Part shown: one piece after another, positions 452 to 16,574 of the stretch
Layout of the letters: every line of letters starts with the position of its first letter
How positions within the stretch are numbered: position 1 is the stretch's first letter
DNA from: Octopus bimaculoides
Lineage: Eukaryota
DNA length: 32,002 nucleotides
Assembly (NCBI RefSeq): GCF_001194135.2
Contig: NC_068984.1
Coordinates: 7,152,530-7,184,531 of the forward strand
Direction: 5' to 3'
Notes under the pieces: model-generated
Database searches by the model: none
Seen by the model: only the letters and a program-made list of their open reading frames with translations
What the model was told of the DNA's origin: nothing
Program-made: the position numbers and the translations under genes

Positions 452-510
452 TGTATGTATGAATGTATGTATGTACGTATGTATGTATGTATGTATGTAC
501 GTATGTATGT
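121..510. repeat. Compound (TA)n/(TACA)n/(TATG)n microsatellites with a short unique spacer
   Basis: Direct reading of the sequence. Confidence 0.95.
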
Positions 511-690
511 GACCGCTGAAATCTACAAGTTTTTTTTATTCTCTGTGTATTTCCTCTTATTCCTTTCTGTTGAAGAGCGTAGGATCGAAACGTAAAAGAT
601 TTTTTCATTCTTCCCGAGTGTCAAACTAATACATTTGCTTGCTGTTCATACACTTGTCCTCGTCTTTTGTTTTTCTATATATTTCAACTA
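510..690 (+). mobile_element. PLE-derived short repeat (family H2), copy 1
   Basis: About 180 bp homologous to 8429-8618; contains an HHR motif and ends in caac(TA)n. Confidence 0.65.
563..598 (+). ncRNA. Minimal hammerhead motif, family H2 (core CUGUUGA)
   Basis: Stem I CUUU/AAAG; CUGUUGA+A 567-574; stem II GAGC-GUAG-GAUC (one mismatch); GAAA; palindromic ACGU; GUA site at 594. Confidence 0.55.
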
Positions 691-698
691 TATATACA

Positions 699-751
<53 letters not shown>

Positions 752-800: not shown

Positions 801-907
801 CACAAAATCTCCGCAGGACACCTGAAGAAGGCTGGAGAGTACATCAGCCGAAACGTTGTGCTAACAATAAACACGATGAGGACAAATATCCGTCAAATGT
901 AAATAAA
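801..907 (+). mobile_element. Truncated copy of the HHR-bearing repeat family H3
   Basis: Homologous to 15770-15875 (gacacctga..cagccgaaacgttgtg..gaggacaaatatccgtcaaatgtaaataa). Confidence 0.85.
817..862 (+). ncRNA. Minimal hammerhead motif, family H3 (core CUGAAGA)
   Basis: Stem I CAC/GUG; CUGAAGA+A 822-829; stem II GGCUG/CAGCC; GAAA 850-853; ACGU; GUU site at 857. Confidence 0.75.
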
Positions 908-1339
908 CTACTTGGTAAATATCAATGCTATCCTTGCTTTAGCATTCTCCGACACAATATATGTACACACATACTCACACACACACACAAACACACACAC
1001 ACACACACACATACACACACATATGTATATATATGCATATGAGTAATGCGTGTGTGTGTGCAAGCATAAATGTATGAATGTTTATACGCATAAATCTGAA
1101 GTCAATTCGTTATCGTAGCTTCGTGTGTGCTTGTAGATGCACGACGTACATATCTGCACCAGACGGTTACTGCTTGTATTTGTGTATATATATCACTGCC
1201 TGTCCGTTTAAATGTATACGTAGTTATGATGAAGGAATCGGTTGAAGAATCTTTTCGTTTAATAGTCTAATTTAATTCGTTTTCGATGATGTTATCATAT
1301 TGAATGAAGAGCAAAACACGTTTCTGTGCGCGGCTTTAT

Positions 1340-4691: not shown

Positions 4692-5048
4692 TTAATATAT
4701 ATATATTTAAAATTTCCGGATTTTGCTGTTTTATGACGTTTTCCCATCTTGTCGATGAAGGCACGAAATAGGGAGTAATAAACAGTCGAGAACGGAGAAG
4801 TTAGACTTCTTTTGGTATTTTGTACCCTACTTGTCGCTCATGCGTTTATGTATGTTTCTCTCGTTGTTGATGTCCTGTACTTAATATATATATATTTAAA
4901 ATTTCCGGATTTTGCTGTTTTATGACGTTTTCCCATCTTGTCGATGAAGGCACGAAATAGGGAGTAATAAACAGTCGAGAACGGAGAAGTTAGACTTCTT
5001 TTGGTATTTTGTACCCTACTTGTCGCTCATGCGTTTATGTATGTTTCT
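4692..5048. repeat. Identical 189-bp tandem duplication running into an N-gap
   Basis: 4692-4859 is repeated at 4881-5048 with no difference seen; copy 2 is cut by the gap. Confidence 0.9.
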
Positions 5049-5321
5049 NNNNNNNNNNNNNNNNNNNNNNNNNNNNNNNNNNNNNNNNNNNNNNNNNNNN
5101 NNNNNNNNNNNNNNNNNNNNNNNNNNNNNNNNNNNNNNNNNNNNNNNNNNNNNNNNNNNNNNNNNNNNNNNNNNNNNNNNNNNNNNNNNNNNNNNNNNNN
5201 NNNNNNNNNNNNNNNNNNNNNNNNNNNNNNNNNNNNNNNNNNNNNNNNNNNNNNNNNNNNNNNNNNNNNNNNNNNNNNNNNNNNNNNNNNNNNNNNNNNN
5301 NNNNNNNNNNNNNNNNNNNNN
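5049..5321. other. Assembly gap (one of 11: also 6469-6674, 8619-8885, 10817-10944, 13478-13697, 19838-20119, 20725-21211, 22161-22898, 23899-24225, 28031-28120, 28914-29272)
   Basis: Runs of N, mostly flanked by (TA)n or other SSRs. Confidence 1.
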
Positions 5322-8428: not shown

Positions 8429-8618
8429 TGATCGCTAAATCCACAAGTTTTTTTTGTTATTCTCTCTGTTTATTTCCTTCTGTCCCTTTCTGCTGAAGAG
8501 CGTAAGCTCGAAACGTAAAAGACTTCTTCACCTTCCCGAGCGTCGAACTAATACACCTGCTTGTTGTTTATACACCTGTCTTCGTCTTTTGTTTTTTCTG
8601 TAAATTTCAACTATATAT
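8429..8618 (+). mobile_element. PLE-derived short repeat (family H2), copy 2
   Basis: Homologous to 510-690; ends in caactatatat at a gap. Confidence 0.65.
8486..8521 (+). ncRNA. Minimal hammerhead motif, family H2 (core CUGCUGA)
   Basis: Stem I CUUU/AAAG; CUGCUGA+A 8490-8497; perfect stem II GAGC-GUAA-GCUC; GAAA; ACGU; GUA site at 8517. Confidence 0.6.
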
Positions 8619-11214: not shown

Positions 11215-11280
11215 GTTAATACACAAGTAAAGAGTATTTATCCACGAATGCAGTGTTCAGCACTCATTCTCACTGTTCGG

Positions 11281-11998
11281 TATTAGTTTATATCTTTTAT
11301 CTGTTACTGGTTTCATCCCAGGGCTGAGGTCATGCTGGTGCACCACCTGTAGTTGCTTGGTGTTGTTTCCGATATCGTTTTTAGTGAAGTAGCGAGTTGG
11401 ACGGAGATGCTCTTCTTTGCGTCTCCTGCCGCGATATGGGTTCATCTGGTATCTCAAGATAGAAACCTGTCTAGATGTTCCTTGAAAACTTCCACATCAA
11501 CACCATGTAGATCTCTAAGGCTGCTTGGCAGGATGTTGAACAATTGTGTGCCTTTGAGACTCAGACTATTGCAGTACTATGTCCTTATTTTAGATGGGGA
11601 AGACAGAATCTTTGTTATGATGCAGTACCGTCCAGTTCGAGGATTGGTACAGCTGTCATTTCCAAAATTGGGGGTTAAACCCTCTAAGATCTTCCGAATA
11701 TATATCACTGCATATCTCTCTCTTCTCCTCTCCAGGGAATAGACTGAGCCCCTTTAGCTTCTCCCATTAGCCCATCTTTTGCATTGAGTCAATTTTCTTT
11801 GTGTATTGGCACTGGATTGCTTCCAGTTCCACAGTTTGTTTCACACTCTTGGCACCATAGTTGGGAGCAGTAGTCCAAGAGGCTGAGAATAAAAGTCATG
11901 CCATGATCAACTTTATCGAAGGCCTTGGCAACGTCGAGGTATATCACGTCTACAGCTGACTGGTTTAGCTGTTGTTTCAGTACCCAGTCAATGTGCTA
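11281..11998 (-). mobile_element. Decayed, internally deleted CR1/L2-group LINE (RT fragment, C-terminus and 3' UTR)
   Basis: VDVIYLDVAKAFDKVDHG joined to TFILSLLDYCSQLW; then ELEAIQ..TKKI..WEKLK..SLERRRERYAVIYIRKILEGL..NSLSLKGTQLFNILP..FKEHLDRFLS with stops and frameshifts. Confidence 0.9.

Positions 11999-12602: not shown

Positions 12603-12640
<38 letters not shown>
12555..12640. repeat. (TG)n microsatellite
   Basis: Direct reading. Confidence 0.97.
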
Positions 12641-12641
<1 letters not shown>

Positions 12642-13132
12642 CTAATGTAAAGTGCAATATGCAATAAAGCACGATGGTTCCGATTTGAAAGCTCCGTGAT
12701 CAGAGCTCAGTTTAATCGTGTTTGATACGAGGCTAAACCACAATACTAACAACGTCTACCATATTACTTAAGTCACAGCAATGTTTTCTATCCATGATAG
12801 CACAGATATTCACCTCAGTAGAGCATCTATCTCCTGATCTATATACGTCATACCGATATAACACTGAAATTTTGTGTTCATTCATTCTCAGAAACGTGGT
12901 ATTATCTATGTTTATGGAGCTATTTTGTTGAAACAACAGAACAAATTATCTACACAATCTTGTATACCACACTTTGATCTTAGCCAAAAGGCTGTGGAAT
13001 AACACACGATCTTATATACTGATAGCGATATCTCCGTGTCCTACTTAATGTGTTTCTATGCAGAGACATAAACTTTGATATGTTTTATGTCTATGACGTT
13101 AGTTTGGTTTACATATATCTATGCTTTTTAAT

Positions 13133-13358
13133 CTTTTCATTCTTTTACTTGTTTCAGTCATTTGACTGCGGTCATGCTGCAGCACTGCCTTCAGTCGAAC
13201 ACATCGACCCCAGGACTTATTGTTTGTGAGCCTAGTACTTATTCTGTCGGTCTCTTTTGACGAGCTCGCTGGTTTACAGGGATATAAACACACTAAGATC
13301 GGTGGTGAAGCGATGGTGGGGGCACAAAGAAACACATGCACATACATACATACATACA

Positions 13359-13389
<31 letters not shown>

Positions 13390-13477
13390 GTGTGTGTGTG
13401 TTTATACGACGGGCCTCTTTCAGTTTCCGTTAACCAAGTCCATTCAAATGGCTTTAGTCGGCCCGAGGCTATAGCAG
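13133..13477 (-). mobile_element. SINE family A, head truncated by a gap
   Basis: cttttacttgtttcagtcatttgactgcggtcatgctg..ggacttatt..agcctagtacttattc..(CATA)n..gtcggcccgaggctatag. Confidence 0.9.
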
Positions 13478-14090: not shown

Positions 14091-15465
14091 GAGAGCCCCC
14101 AAACAAGTTTTGTTAGCAAATTAATCTTAATATTAGAGACAAGGATAAGAGTTGTAGTCCGATTCTGGAAAACCCTCCTTCACCAACGACTACCCCAAAA
14201 CAGACCAGTGGGTTGCAGGGTTGTCACCTGAGCAGTGCAAAGGTGTCATATTGCGGGAATAGAATAGAATCACAGAATCACCAACAAATGGTAGCTACAG
14301 CGACAAGCTGTTACTGCGCATGCCTCCATGCTGCTGCTGCTACTACTACCACTACTACTACTACTACTATAGTTTACCGCCATTTTCGACTGTCACACCA
14401 TAGCGGCTGATATCTATACATTTATTCTATCGTACATTGTATATCTACCACAATGCATGTAATTATGTTCTTGTATTTCGCTAATAAATACATATTCCAT
14501 AACGTGTGGAGTTTTTCAGTGAAATTTTTAATAGGTTTCTCTTGAAATTGTTTCTATTTCTACTTTGATAGCTCGATATTTCAGTTAGATACTAGAGCGC
14601 TTTATTTTCTACCATTATATTGCACGATTCATTAATCTAGCTTATTGTATAATATAGTTTTATTACCATATTTCTTCTCACAGTAACCATAGATATGTTT
14701 TAAATCTGACACCTTTATTTAAACTTCGCACCTTGCCAACATACCTAACACCTTTCTATATCAAATATTTATTCATAATGTCTTCATTTCATGGTTTATA
14801 AATGAGAATAATTCAAGTGAAGGGGAAAATAATCAGTTGATATACAAGGAAGCATATTTTGAAATGATTTTTGTTGCCATGTTTCAGCCAGAGCAAGAAA
14901 AAAAAAAGGGGGGAAGTAGAGAAAATTCTGAATAAGCAACGAAACATTCTTTCGTCGTGTTTTATTCCCGCTGCCTTTTGACCTTTTTACAGAAATATTA
15001 AATTTTGATCGAAGAGCGCCCGACTGAAGTATAAGAGCCTGGTGTACAGTACGGTTATTCTACGATGACAATACAACACAAAACATGATAACGTGCATTT
15101 TGTCCCTTTTATTATTTGAAACTGAGGTCACGAATATATTTCTATTTCTAGCAGTTTATGGTAGCGGGAGTTTGTCTTCTGTCTAGACAGAAGAAATCAA
15201 TATAATCGATAGTGGTTTTGATTTACGTCAATGACTCGGATCTCTTCATTCAAATATTGAACTAAAATATCCACATTTTTGGTGTAAATACACGGCAATC
15301 AGTTTATCGGTGACTGATGGCTTCCATTGATAAAATTAGCTGACTCTCTTGTCTGTTATTGAACCCCAATTCAGCACTGATTGAGCAAACTTATGGACAA
15401 AATCTTTCCACGTTATTTACATTATTTACATTTGACGGATATTTGTCCTCCTCTTGTTTGTTATT

Positions 15466-15511
15466 AACACAACGTTTCGGCTGATATACCCTCCAGCCTT
15501 CATCAGGTGTC
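15466..15511 (-). ncRNA. Minimal hammerhead motif family H3 (canonical CUGAUGA)
   Basis: GACAC-CUGAUGA-A-GGCUG-(10-nt loop)-CAGCC-GAAA-CG-UU-GUGUU. Confidence 0.8.
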
Positions 15512-15582
15512 TTGGGGAAATTTCGAACCTGGGTTCTTATTCCTATGGTATTTTTCGATATTATTATTATTATTCAGGTCAC

Positions 15583-15648
15583 TGCCTGGAATCGAACTCG
15601 GAATATTGGGGTTAGCAGCCCGTGCTCTTAACCCTACGCCATGTGCCC
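15583..15648 (-). promoter_or_regulatory. tRNA-Ser(GCU)-like internal pol III promoter (SINE head)
   Basis: A-box-like TGGCGTAGGGTTAAG, anticodon arm ggg-CTGCTAA-ccc, B-box GAGTTCGATTCC. Confidence 0.7.
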
Positions 15649-15656
15649 GTGACCTG

Positions 15657-15662
<6 letters not shown>

Positions 15663-15736
<74 letters not shown>
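15663..15736. repeat. (AAT)n inside the composite element
   Basis: Direct reading. Confidence 0.97.
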
Positions 15737-15783
15737 GAAAAAATACTTTAGGAATGAGAACCCAGATTTGAAATTTCCCCCAA

Positions 15784-15829
15784 GACACCTGATGAAGGCT
15801 GGAGGGTATATCAGCCGAAACGTTGTGTT
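15784..15829 (+). ncRNA. Minimal hammerhead motif family H3 (canonical CUGAUGA)
   Basis: Identical over 46 nt to the reverse complement of 15466-15511; predicted GUU site at 15824. Confidence 0.8.
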
Positions 15830-16574
15830 AACAACAAACAAGATGAGGACAAGTATCCGTCAAATGTATATAATCTAAATAATGTAATTAATGTACATAA
15901 ATCCTAATCTCTCAAATATAGAACTGTAAAATCTTTCCAGTTCTGAACATCCCATCTTCTTGTGCGTCAGGGACTCTGTTGTCTTAGGAAAAACTTCATT
16001 CTTTATGGAATATGTATTTGTTACGAAATGCAAAAGGAACGTTACTACGTGCATATTAGGAGATATAATTCACCAAAGAATAAATCTAAAGATATTAGCC
16101 AAGCTGCTGGCTAGTTTGTTAATTAAATTAAATTTACTGACACAATTTGCTTGAAAGATCTATTTTTCTATAGAATAAACCTATAAATATCAGCTAACAT
16201 AGTGAGATTGTAGAGTGTGGTCTGAAGATCTGAAGATAACTTAATTATTATTTCAAGCAGACTGAACGATTACGTTGAGGCACCTCCGATAGATCGTAGC
16301 TCTACTGTAATATTCGGGGTGGAGGCTTAAGCATTCCACAGTTAAAAAAAAAAATTCATTCAACAATCAGGTAATAAATTTAACCTTGATTGGTTCTCTG
16401 ATAATTGATTTATTAATTACTCTCATTTTGCAATCAGCTTACTTCTTCTTTTCTCTTTTTTAGCCCTAGGATTCATAAGGCCGGTTACCCGGTTTCCATG
16501 GCGTATTGGTGACTGACATCACAACACTCACCTTGAACGGGACTCCGATCCGTTGTAGGATTCAAGTTCAGCAA

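What the first reader, a model, noticed from the sequence alone, without database searches (positions are those of the whole stretch)
15413..15930. Candidate Penelope-mobilised SINE: tRNA-Ser pol III head, hammerhead body and PLE-style inverted terminal copy
On the minus strand a tRNA-like head (A/B boxes, GCU anticodon loop) runs via gtgacctgaat and (AAT)n into a body with a canonical CUGAUGA hammerhead. Fused to the head's 5' end is an inverted copy of the whole body, with a second HHR. The 46-nt ribozyme is identical in both arms, while the flanks differ at 7 of about 46 and 4 of 45 positions. In the third copy (817-862) changes fall mainly at N7 and loop II. Established: SINE tails usually come from LINEs, and HHRs plus inverted terminal copies are PLE hallmarks. 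Inference: a pol III-driven, self-cleaving non-autonomous element that uses PLE machinery. I do not know this combination to have been described.
Basis: partly seen in the sequence, partly recalled or inferred. Interest (0 to 1): 0.88.

Follow-up and report, generated by a model that had tools for sequence, protein, structure and literature searches.

The report
Octopus tRNA-SINE with Penelope-type hammerhead
This is one old insertion of a short octopus retroposon that joins a tRNA-like promoter head to a body carrying the minimal hammerhead ribozyme typical of Penelope-like retroelements, laid down as a head-to-head inverted pair; it is a plausible but unproven case of a SINE that borrows Penelope machinery instead of LINE machinery.

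Summary
The window is octopus DNA. Bases 15411-15927 are one insertion flanked by a 12-bp target-site duplication. It holds a full unit on the minus strand: a tRNA-like head with A and B boxes, TGAAT, (AAT)n, and a roughly 150-nt body. An inverted, 5'-truncated copy abuts the head. Both arms carry a minimal type-I hammerhead that meets every published sequence criterion for Penelope-like-element (PLE) ribozymes. Rfam's hammerhead and tRNA models do not detect either feature.

A second octopus locus, seen through a gene model, has the same order of head, linker, (AAT)n and body. Other copies are 5'-truncated, and two of them lie next to (TA)n.

PLE hallmarks at the locus:
- an inverted 5'-truncated copy at the 5' end;
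- a roughly 30-nt 3' tail at one end only;
- 5' truncation in other copies.

A different repeat in the same window is the 3' end of an autonomous octopus PLE. No PLE carrying this body was found. Self-cleavage and pol III transcription are untested.

tRNA-promoter SINE-like elements with hammerheads are already known (Schistosoma Sm-alpha), and so are non-autonomous PLE derivatives. I rate this a new variant of a known kind, of moderate interest.

The parts
15399..15410 (.). Left copy of the 12-bp target-site duplication AAAATCTTTCCA
   Evidence: Exact direct repeat found only at the two outer boundaries of the composite.
15411..15559 (-). Body of the full (direct) unit, ending in the short-form 3' end ...CCGTCAAATGTAAATAATGTAAATAAC
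   Evidence: 91.5% identical to the right arm. Same 3' terminus as copy 3 and the L001 copy.
15466..15511 (-). Minimal type-I hammerhead of the direct unit: helix I GACAC/GUGUU, core CUGAUGA, bulged A, helix II GGCUGG/UCAGCC, GAAAC-GU, cleavage predicted after U at 15471
   Evidence: Descriptor scan. The minimum-free-energy fold forms helices I and II.
15560..15575 (-). Internal (AAT)5 microsatellite plus linker of the direct unit
   Evidence: Read directly. The same position holds (AAT)n in the right arm, in L001 and in P0002.
15576..15654 (-). tRNA-like head. A box 15641-15631, anticodon-like GCT 15616-15614, B box 15597-15588. The acceptor-like pair GGTCAC (15654-15649) / GTGACC (15582-15577) forms the innermost 6 bp of the large inverted repeat.
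   Evidence: ARAGORN at -ps80 only. A+B box combination unique in 157 kb and absent from 50 shuffles. No Rfam tRNA hit.
15655..15736 (+). Linker TGAAT and (AAT)~26 of the inverted, 5'-truncated copy
   Evidence: Tandem Repeats Finder: 15657-15736, period 3, 26.3 copies. Inverted-repeat match 15649-15673 against 15582-15559.
15737..15885 (+). Body of the inverted copy
15784..15829 (+). Second minimal hammerhead, identical to the first; cleavage predicted at 15824|15825
15886..15927 (+). Extra 9-mer repeats (AATGTAAAT-like) and the roughly 30-nt 3' tail TCCTAATCTCTCAAATATAGAACTGT. Present at this end only.
   Evidence: The same tail is present in the independent copy at L002:14640-14700 and absent from the left arm, copy 3 and L001.
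15928..15939 (.). Right copy of the target-site duplication
805..910 (+). Third, 5'-truncated copy of the body (hammerhead at 822-853). It starts directly after a (GT)n(TA)n microsatellite and has the short-form 3' end.

Best explanation
Bases 15411-15927 are the product of one retrotransposition event of an octopus tRNA-derived SINE family.

The unit, 5' to 3' on the minus strand, is:
- a roughly 79-nt tRNA-like head with internal pol III A and B boxes;
- the linker TGAAT;
- an internal (AAT)n;
- a roughly 150-nt body holding a Penelope-type minimal hammerhead;
- (AATGTAAAT)n;
- an optional tail of about 30 nt.

Inferred mechanism. Pol III transcribes the unit from the head and stops at a flanking T-run. 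A Penelope-like reverse transcriptase with its GIY-YIG nickase recognises the PLE-derived 3' module. It primes cDNA synthesis at both nicks of a break staggered by 12 bp. One cDNA reaches the RNA 5' end. The other stops at the 3' strand of the acceptor-like stem. The two cDNA ends (..GTGACC-3' and ..GGTCAC-3') are complementary and are joined there. This gives a full copy with an inverted 5'-truncated copy at its 5' end, the arrangement described for PLE insertions.

The hammerhead came with the PLE 3' end. As a single copy without a helix III loop it is probably inactive in cis. Its role is more likely in recognition or processing by the partner element.

Shown: the anatomy, the target-site duplication, the recurrence of the unit, the ribozyme layout, and the presence of PLEs in this genome. 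Inferred: the pol III drive, PLE mobilisation, the double-priming mechanism, and any cleavage.
For: Organism and second locus:
- Translated-repeat hits go only to Octopus proteins.
- P0002 reads RC-body (through GAAACGTT and CUGAUGA), (ATT)n, RC-linker and RC-head in one frame. It shares nothing else with the window.

Locus anatomy:
- A 12-bp target-site duplication flanks the whole composite.
- The A+B box pair is unique in 157 kb, with none in shuffles.

Ribozyme:
- That paper also reports dual minimal hammerheads 100-700 bp apart on opposite strands.
- A PLE reverse-transcriptase homologue from another genome carries CTGACGA-A-GGGC..GCTC-GAAAC-GT-C 96 nt after its stop codon, which is the same layout.

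PLE insertion hallmarks (PMC8557442):
- an inverted 5'-truncated copy at the 5' end;
- a tail at one end only, which recurs in L002;
- 5' truncation in copy 3 and L001;
- (TA)n next to copy 3 and the L002 copy.

PLEs in this genome:
- Autonomous PLEs with RT (RVT_1; homologues carrying GIY-YIG PF01541) occur in the octopus loci.
- Their 3' ends (family B) occur twice in this same window.
- PLE families are reported as recently active in O. vulgaris (PMC13282606).
Against: - No PLE whose 3' end matches the body was found in 157 kb of octopus DNA. The one reconstructed PLE ends in a different sequence.
- Only two loci extend far enough 5' to test whether head and body co-occur.
- The head is not recognised by ARAGORN at default settings or by Rfam's tRNA model.
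- No tandem or pseudo-LTR arrangement was seen.
- The 3' end carries 9-mer tandem repeats, which is more typical of LINE and SINE tails.
- The L002 copy has a classical twin-priming inversion, which LINE machinery can also produce.
- Cleavage at the hammerhead would separate the promoter head from the 3' recognition end, so a self-cleaving role is not obviously useful to the element.
- Old copies do not keep the ribozyme intact.
Confidence: 0.6

Rival explanations
1. It is an ordinary LINE-mobilised tRNA-SINE. The hammerhead-like motif is a passenger or relic, and the inverted pair arose by LINE-type twin priming or template switching.
For: - The 3' end has short tandem repeats (AATGTAAAT)n, as in many stringent LINE and SINE tails.
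- The L002 copy shows a textbook twin-priming inversion, with an internal segment inverted next to the direct 3' end.
- LINEs (Dong-R4, CR1, RTE, L1-Tx1) are the most active octopus retrotransposons.
- No matching PLE was found.
Against: - In classical twin priming the inverted piece is internal. Here both arms carry the element's 3' end facing outward.
- A tail extension at one end only is described for PLEs and not for LINE target-primed reverse transcription.
- The ribozyme fits the PLE minimal-hammerhead criteria point by point.
- No LINE with this tail was seen in 157 kb either.
Confidence: 0.2
2. It is a chance or modular nesting. A head-less PLE-derived non-autonomous element that targets microsatellites inserted into the (AAT)n tail of an unrelated simple tRNA-(AAT)n SINE, and the hairpin is two such events.
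For: - The L001 copy has (AAT)n plus the body but no recognisable head upstream.
- PLEs favour microsatellite targets.
- Copy 3 and the L002 copy lie next to (TA)n.
Against: - One target-site duplication flanks the whole composite.
- The body's 5' end meets (AAT)n at the same position in four copies, which is not expected from 5'-truncating insertions.
- P0002 shows the same order of head, linker, (AAT)n and body at another locus.
- L001's upstream 'cagtgtcactcaat' resembles the end of the head plus the linker, which fits 5' truncation there.
Confidence: 0.1
3. It is an assembly artefact or a DNA-level inverted duplication in a gappy draft assembly, not a retrotransposition product.
For: The window has 11 N-gaps. 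It also holds other suspicious structures next to gaps: a 100% identical 189-bp tandem at 4692-5048 and a palindrome at 21212-21491.
Against: - The arms differ at 16 of 150 positions, in (AAT)n length (5 against 26 units) and in their 3' ends.
- No gap adjoins the locus.
- The composite has a clean target-site duplication.
Confidence: 0.03
4. It is a host-exapted hairpin locus. Read-through transcription would give a roughly 170-bp imperfect dsRNA that could serve as an ADAR-editing or small-RNA substrate, and the conserved 54-nt stretch would reflect selection on that.
For: The identical 54-nt run between the arms is longer than expected (P about 0.008). Octopus is known for extensive A-to-I editing of dsRNA formed by inverted repeats (PMC5625713, from title and abstract only).
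Against: There is no evidence of transcription or of conservation across species. The identical stretch coincides with the ribozyme. That is equally explained by two source RNAs that differ only outside a constrained motif, or by gene conversion between the arms.
Confidence: 0.05

Closest known systems
Sm-alpha / Sj-alpha SINE-like retroposons of Schistosoma (Ferbeyre et al. 1998; Laha et al. 2000; cited through PMC2770079 and PMC6765202)
   Same: Short non-coding retroposons that combine a tRNA-derived pol III promoter (tRNA-Gln-like in S. mansoni) with a type-I hammerhead in the same transcript.
   Different: Sm-alpha carries a canonical hammerhead with a helix III, is detected by Rfam, and is often in tandem arrays where multimeric transcripts self-cleave. 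The octopus element has the loop-less minimal hammerhead and is dispersed as single or head-to-head copies. It also has an internal (AAT)n and PLE-style insertion scars.
Minimal hammerheads of Penelope-like elements (Cervera & de la Pena 2014, PMC4209133; Lunse et al. 2017, which I could not read here)
   Same: The core, the extra nucleotide after A9, the G10.1-C11.1 pair, the palindromic ACGU in place of helix III, a short helix I and a long helix II. That paper also reports pairs of motifs on opposite strands 100-700 bp apart, and thousands of dispersed 'orphan' copies.
   Different: Those motifs were assigned to PLE pseudo-LTRs or to truncated PLEs. Here the motif sits behind a tRNA-like pol III head in a roughly 300-nt non-coding unit.
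Non-autonomous PLE derivatives: animal non-LTR retrozymes (bioRxiv 10.64898/2026.07.22.740005; PMC7761336) and MRC1/Chlamys non-autonomous elements (PMC8557442)
   Same: Non-coding elements that share PLE terminal sequence or ribozymes and are presumed to use PLE RT and EN in trans.
   Different: Retrozymes are tandem arrays with canonical type-I hammerheads that yield circular RNAs. MRC1 forms pseudo-LTRs. None is described with a tRNA-derived pol III head in the papers I could read.
Octopus tRNA-derived SINEs OK, OR1, OR2 (Ohshima & Okada 1994; known to me only by citation)
   Same: tRNA-derived SINE families in octopus genomes.
   Different: From my own recollection, and not checked against any source here, those derive from tRNA-Lys and tRNA-Arg. 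Per PMC4758252, OR2 is a CORE-SINE. This head looks tRNA-Ser(GCU)-like. I could not compare sequences.

Membership tests
tRNA-derived SINE | Head related to a tRNA, with internal pol III A and B boxes at tRNA spacing | tested here: met
   TGGCGTAGGGT ... GTTCGATTCC, with the A box at +14 and the B box at +58 of the 79-nt head. This is the only such pair in 157 kb on both strands, with none in 50 shuffles.
tRNA-derived SINE | Head recognisable as a tRNA by standard detectors | tested here: inconclusive
   ARAGORN default gives no call. At -ps80 it calls tRNA-Ser(GCT), but that setting has a high false-positive rate. Rfam tRNA gives no hit at E<=10.
tRNA-derived SINE | Short, non-coding, dispersed copies with 5' truncation and target-site duplications | tested here: met
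   The unit is about 250-330 nt. There are six copies or fragments in four loci plus P0002, and a 12-bp target-site duplication at the main locus.
tRNA-derived SINE | 3' end shared with an autonomous partner retrotransposon | tested here: not met
   No RT-encoding element with this 3' end was found in the window or in L001-L003. The sample is only 157 kb, so this is weak negative evidence.
tRNA-derived SINE | Transcription by RNA polymerase III | not testable with these tools
   The unit has no TTTT inside it on the sense strand and has a TTTT in the 3' flank (15399-15402 read on the minus strand). That is compatible but is not a test.
PLE-type minimal hammerhead (PMC4209133) | Conserved core CUGANGA ... 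GAAA | tested here: met
   CUGAUGA ... GAAA in both arms and CUGAAGA ... GAAA in copy 3.
PLE-type minimal hammerhead (PMC4209133) | [quoted passage not shown] | tested here: met
   CUGAUGA-A-GGCUGG...UCAGCC-GAAA, with a helix II of 6 bp counted after the bulge.
PLE-type minimal hammerhead (PMC4209133) | Palindromic 15.2-16.2 without a loop 3 (dimer-forming helix III), and a short helix I | tested here: met
   GAAA-C-G-U-U gives the palindrome ACGU. Helix I GACAC/GUGUU is 5 bp including one G-U pair.
PLE-type minimal hammerhead (PMC4209133) | Located in the pseudo-LTR or 3' region of an element encoding RT and GIY-YIG | tested here: not met
   No coding PLE with this sequence was found. Comparable motifs do sit after PLE ORFs in L004/L005 and, in degenerate form, in octopus family B.
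PLE-type minimal hammerhead (PMC4209133) | Self-cleavage, as a dimer | not testable with these tools
   Needs in vitro transcription of monomer and dimer constructs.
Rfam hammerhead families (Hammerhead_1, _3, _II, HH9, HH10) | Score at or above the family gathering threshold | tested here: not met
   No hammerhead hit at gathering threshold or at E<=10. This is expected for a motif with no helix III hairpin.
PLE-type insertion architecture (PMC8557442) | An inverted 5'-truncated copy immediately adjacent to the 5' end, forming flanking inverted repeats | tested here: met
   The right arm is an inverted copy truncated at the head/linker boundary. Both 3' ends face outward.
PLE-type insertion architecture (PMC8557442) | A 30-40-bp tail extension present at one end only | tested here: met
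   The roughly 30-nt extension TCCTAATCTCTCAAATATAGAACTGT is at the right end only. The same extension is on the L002 copy, and three other copies lack it.
PLE-type insertion architecture (PMC8557442) | Partial tandem copies forming a pseudo-LTR | tested here: not met
   No direct tandem of the unit at any of the loci.
PLE-type insertion architecture (PMC8557442) | Microsatellite insertion bias | tested here: inconclusive
   Copy 3 and the L002 copy abut (TA)n. The main locus and L001 do not. The sample is too small.
Animal non-LTR retrozyme | Tandem arrays of hammerhead-bearing units that yield circular RNAs | tested here: not met
   No tandem array. Circular RNA cannot be tested here.

The most novel reading that the evidence does not exclude
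This would be a class of true SINEs, with a tRNA-derived pol III head, whose 3' recognition module comes from Penelope-like elements rather than LINEs. If so, part of the thousands of 'orphan' minimal hammerheads scattered through animal genomes would be SINE bodies rather than truncated PLEs. The tRNA acceptor-stem complementarity would direct the head-to-head joining of two cDNAs.
Probability: 0.4. Interest if true: 0.65.

Novelty: new variant of a known kind. Interest (0 to 1): 0.5.

Why it matters
SINEs are defined in practice by their dependence on LINE partners. A tRNA-headed SINE that uses Penelope machinery would extend that partnership to the third major group of retrotransposons.

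It would also help explain why minimal hammerheads are so numerous and mostly found away from coding PLEs.

A roughly 300-nt pol III-driven unit would be a small, tractable substrate for two open questions. The first is what the PLE hammerhead does. The second is how PLE insertions acquire their inverted copies and tails.

In octopus, SINEs are reported as 11.6% of the genome and are mostly unclassified (PMC13282606). A partner assignment for one family would therefore also help annotation.

The gain is limited, because hammerhead-bearing tRNA-promoter SINE-like elements and non-autonomous PLE derivatives are both already known.

Tried and rejected
- Rfam at gathering threshold and at E<=10 over the locus and over the head alone gave no hammerhead or tRNA hit, only noise such as Thr_leader on the AAT run.
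- A scan of JGI metagenome contigs for the 22-mer GTANATCAGCCGAAACGTTGTG found nothing. I did not use the second scan because octopus DNA is not expected there.
- Fetching the DNA of the two gene models that contain the repeat (P0001, P0002), of isoform P0003 and of PLE homologue P0008 failed because they are not on record. P0004's gene is too long to fetch.
- I searched for the partner PLE with the octopus PLE reverse transcriptase as query. It returned 909 homologues, and none of the 120 listed hits that carry an organism name is an octopus; most carry no name. The one locus I fetched (L004/L005) has no similarity to family A or B. It does carry a minimal hammerhead of the same layout.
- An apparent resemblance between the reverse complement of the family-A tail (ACAAGATGAGGACAAGT) and the family-B PLE 3' end (ACTTGTCCTCGTCTTTTG) stood out for one of three B copies only (score 29 against a shuffle mean of 18.5 and maximum of 30). 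I treat it as chance.
- The sequence upstream of the L001 copy is not a diverged head (alignment score 22 against a shuffle mean of 19) and is not repeated elsewhere in the data.
- A snap-back model, in which the cDNA self-primes at the acceptor stem and copies itself, explains the junction. I ranked it below two-primer synthesis because the copied arm (the right arm) carries a tail that its supposed template (the left arm) lacks.
- Literature searches for a SINE mobilised by Penelope found nothing. Repbase, Dfam, SINEBase and the Lunse et al. 2017 paper could not be consulted.
Full report
What is in the sequence.

The window is a gappy, AT-rich (32% GC), microsatellite-rich eukaryotic draft with no long ORFs. 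The region given is a large imperfect hairpin. The left arm 15413-15582 is the reverse complement of the right arm 15649-15885, at 91.5% identity. The centre, 15583-15648, reads on the minus strand as a tRNA-like sequence.

Each arm holds the motif GACAC-CUGAUGA-A-GGCUGG-AGGGUAUA-UCAGCC-GAAAC-GU-U|GUGUU. It lies on the plus strand at 15784-15829 and on the minus strand at 15511-15466. A third, 5'-truncated copy lies at 805-910.

I add three anatomical points.
- The whole composite, 15411-15927, is bracketed by the exact 12-bp direct repeat AAAATCTTTCCA at 15399-15410 and 15928-15939. This motif occurs nowhere else in the window.
- The innermost 6 bp of the inverted repeat, GGTCAC at 15654-15649 and GTGACC at 15582-15577 on the minus strand, are the pair that ARAGORN uses as the acceptor stem of the tRNA-like head.
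- The two outer ends differ. The left arm stops at ...AATGTAAATAAC. The right arm continues through two more 9-mer repeats and a roughly 30-nt extension, TCCTAATCTCTCAAATATAGAACTGT.

Is it more than chance?

The A-box/B-box pair at tRNA spacing (TGGCGTAG...GTTCGATTCC) occurs once in 157 kb of octopus DNA on both strands and never in 50 block shuffles.

Detection of the head as a tRNA is weak. ARAGORN finds nothing at default settings. It calls tRNA-Ser(GCT) only at 80% of threshold, a setting that produces 87 calls in 157 kb.4% of shuffles. Rfam's tRNA model gives nothing at E<=10 even on 96 nt. I therefore call the head tRNA-derived on the strength of the promoter boxes, the anticodon-like loop CUGCUAA and the GGTTAAG D-loop. 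It is not a validated cloverleaf.

A simple minimal-hammerhead descriptor finds five matches in 157 kb on both strands. Three are this family. The other two have only 4-bp stems and lack the other features. Rfam's hammerhead models give no hit, as expected when helix III has no hairpin.

The arms are identical over a 54-nt run that contains the ribozyme, against 16 differences in 150 columns. The chance of such a run is about 0.008, and the chance of no difference in the predefined 46-nt window is about 0.002.

Organism and other copies.

A concatenated six-frame translation of the unit hit only two proteins among 5.8 billion, and both are Octopus.

P0001 is O. sinensis LOC115224785 isoform X2. 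It begins with MRTQVRNFPKTPEEGWRVYQPKRCVNNKHDEDNYPS, which is an exonised body.

P0002 is an O. bimaculoides NUP42 model. It ends with ...ERFQDYPSSGVLGKFRTWVLIPKVFFDAIIIIIIIIIQVTAWNRTRNLGVSSLCS. This is the reverse-complement reading of the hammerhead region, the start of the body, (AAT)n, the linker and the 3' half of the head. P0002 shares nothing else with the window and differs from it within the repeat, so it is an independent locus with the same order of head, linker, (AAT)n and body.

Through relatives of P0001 I obtained 125 kb of O. sinensis and O. bimaculoides DNA as L001-L003. These loci hold two more family-A copies and no further head.
- L001:32619-32741 has a long (AAT)n and the body with its ribozyme core deleted. 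It is preceded by 'cagtgtcactcaat', which resembles the end of the head plus the linker, but by no head.
- L002:14674-14770 has an inverted tail fused to a forward ribozyme segment, abuts (TA)n, and carries the same roughly 30-nt extension as the window's right arm.

Across the family there are two discrete 3' ends. The short form is in the left arm, copy 3 and L001. The long form is in the right arm and L002. The family also shows 5' truncation, and in four copies the body meets (AAT)n at the same position.

Comparison with Penelope-like elements.

Cervera and de la Pena (PMC4209133) list features that emerged beyond their search descriptor. [quoted passage not shown] They also note pairs of motifs 100-700 bp apart on opposite strands. 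The octopus motif meets each of these.

Craig et al. (PMC8557442) describe PLE insertions as 5'-truncated and often in partial tandem. [quoted passage not shown] This locus shows the inverted copy and the one-sided tail, and other copies show truncation. The microsatellite association is seen in two of four loci. No tandem is seen.

PLEs are present and close by. L002 (minus strand, about 31300 to 28100) encodes a reverse transcriptase (RVT_1) followed by an ORF bearing the sequence ...IIYCVSCSLCHSLYIGQTGR, which I read as a GIY-YIG-like motif. Pfam did not detect GIY-YIG in that ORF, but homologues of the RT ORF carry GIY-YIG PF01541.

The last roughly 190 nt of that element are a repeat I had already seen twice in the window, at 505-700 and 8429-8618, and called family B. 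In three independent copies family B follows PLE coding sequence. It contains a degenerate hammerhead-like motif, CUG(C/U)UGAAGAGCGUA(A/G)GCUCGAAAC(G/A)U.

A PLE reverse-transcriptase homologue from an unidentified ENA assembly (L004/L005) carries CTGACGA-A-GGGC-TAAC-GCTC-GAAAC-GT-C 96 nt after its stop codon. That layout matches family A.

What I could not show is the key link, a PLE whose 3' end is the family-A body.

How it most likely works.

I read the unit as a SINE in which a pol III promoter head was joined to the 3' module of a PLE. The join may have come through an (AAT)n tail, since PLEs favour microsatellites.

The single target-site duplication, the two outward-facing 3' ends and the two different 3' termini fit cDNA synthesis primed at both nicks of a 12-bp staggered break, on two RNA copies. 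One cDNA reached the RNA 5' end (..GTGACC-3'). The other stopped at the 3' strand of the acceptor-like stem (..GGTCAC-3'). These ends are complementary and would anneal. That would explain why the inverted copy is truncated exactly at the boundary between head and linker.

If two different source RNAs were used, the clustering of arm differences outside the ribozyme would reflect constraint on active master copies rather than on this dead locus. Post-insertion divergence with gene conversion is an alternative.

A snap-back self-priming model gives the same junction. It fits less well, because the supposedly copied arm has a tail that its template lacks.

All of this mechanism is inference. The ribozyme as a single loop-less motif is expected to be nearly inactive in cis. 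Cleavage would also separate the promoter from the 3' recognition end. I therefore favour a recognition or passenger role over routine self-cleavage.

What is already known.

The combination of a tRNA-derived pol III promoter with a hammerhead in a SINE-like retroposon is established for Schistosoma Sm-alpha and Sj-alpha.

Non-autonomous PLE derivatives are also described: Chlamys MRC1 and animal retrozymes.

I found no paper describing a tRNA-headed SINE with a PLE-type minimal hammerhead, or any SINE assigned to a PLE partner. I could not consult Repbase, Dfam or SINEBase, and could not read Lunse et al. 2017. The recent O. vulgaris repeat annotation lists 893 unclassified SINE families with recently active copies and 30 recently active Penelope families. 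It mentions no hammerhead or ribozyme.

Verdict.

The SINE reading is well supported. The Penelope partnership is the best explanation but lacks the partner element. The claim of an undescribed combination is only partly right. I rate it a new variant of a known kind, with interest of about 0.5.

Noticed in passing
window 505-700 and 8429-8618 (+): A second repeat family, which I call family B (84% identical pair). It is the 3' terminal roughly 190 nt of an autonomous octopus Penelope-like element. It carries a degenerate hammerhead-like motif CTG(C/T)TGAAGAGCGTA(A/G)G(C/A)TCGAAACGTA and ends at (TA)n/(TG)n or at an assembly gap.
   Followed up: yes
L002:28100-31300 (-): A near-complete PLE. 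It has an RT ORF at 30382-29015, a downstream ORF with a GIY-YIG-like motif (29540-28992), a long CT-rich low-complexity 3' UTR, then family B and (TA)n. The reading frame is broken between the upstream region and the RT.
   Followed up: partly
L002:43807-45479: A 5'-truncated copy of the same PLE (+, 44519-45479). An inverted family-B fragment (43954-43807, -) lies about 560 bp upstream, and both outer ends abut (TA)n(TG)n. This may be a PLE-style inverted arrangement inside a microsatellite. I did not resolve the sequence in between.
   Followed up: partly
L001:20231-21900 (+): A second PLE family, with an RT C-terminus and a GIY-YIG-like YVGETARSIGERINE. Its 3' UTR holds CTGATGCGGTCACAGGAGTGTGACGAAAG, which is hammerhead-like but has C in place of A9. 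It also holds the motif TCTGGCCGAAAT, which occurs in the L002 PLE 3' UTR as well.
   Followed up: no
P0001 (O. sinensis LOC115224785 isoform X2) and P0002 (O. bimaculoides NUP42 model A0A0L8FR24): Gene models take their first 36 residues (P0001) or last roughly 58 residues (P0002) from this SINE. This is either real exonisation or annotation artefact.
   Followed up: no
window 4692-5048: A 189-bp unit repeated 1.9 times at 100% identity, directly next to the N-gap at 5049-5321. This is probably an assembly artefact.
   Followed up: no
window 21212-21491: A 280-bp sequence that matches its own reverse complement at 95%, starting right after the N-gap at 20725-21211. It could be a real foldback or an assembly artefact.
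   Followed up: no
window 13126-13474, 21599-21971, 26267-26667; L001:1030-1200: Another dispersed repeat family at 77-85% identity, whose translation contains ETDRISTRLTxNKSWxR. It is shared between the window and O. sinensis. I did not classify it.
   Followed up: no
L001 c[26976-27076]; L002 c[11255-11350], c[12614-12711]: Relaxed ARAGORN calls of tRNA-Lys(TTT)-like sequences recur inside another repeat. They may be heads of a different octopus SINE family or may be false positives.
   Followed up: no
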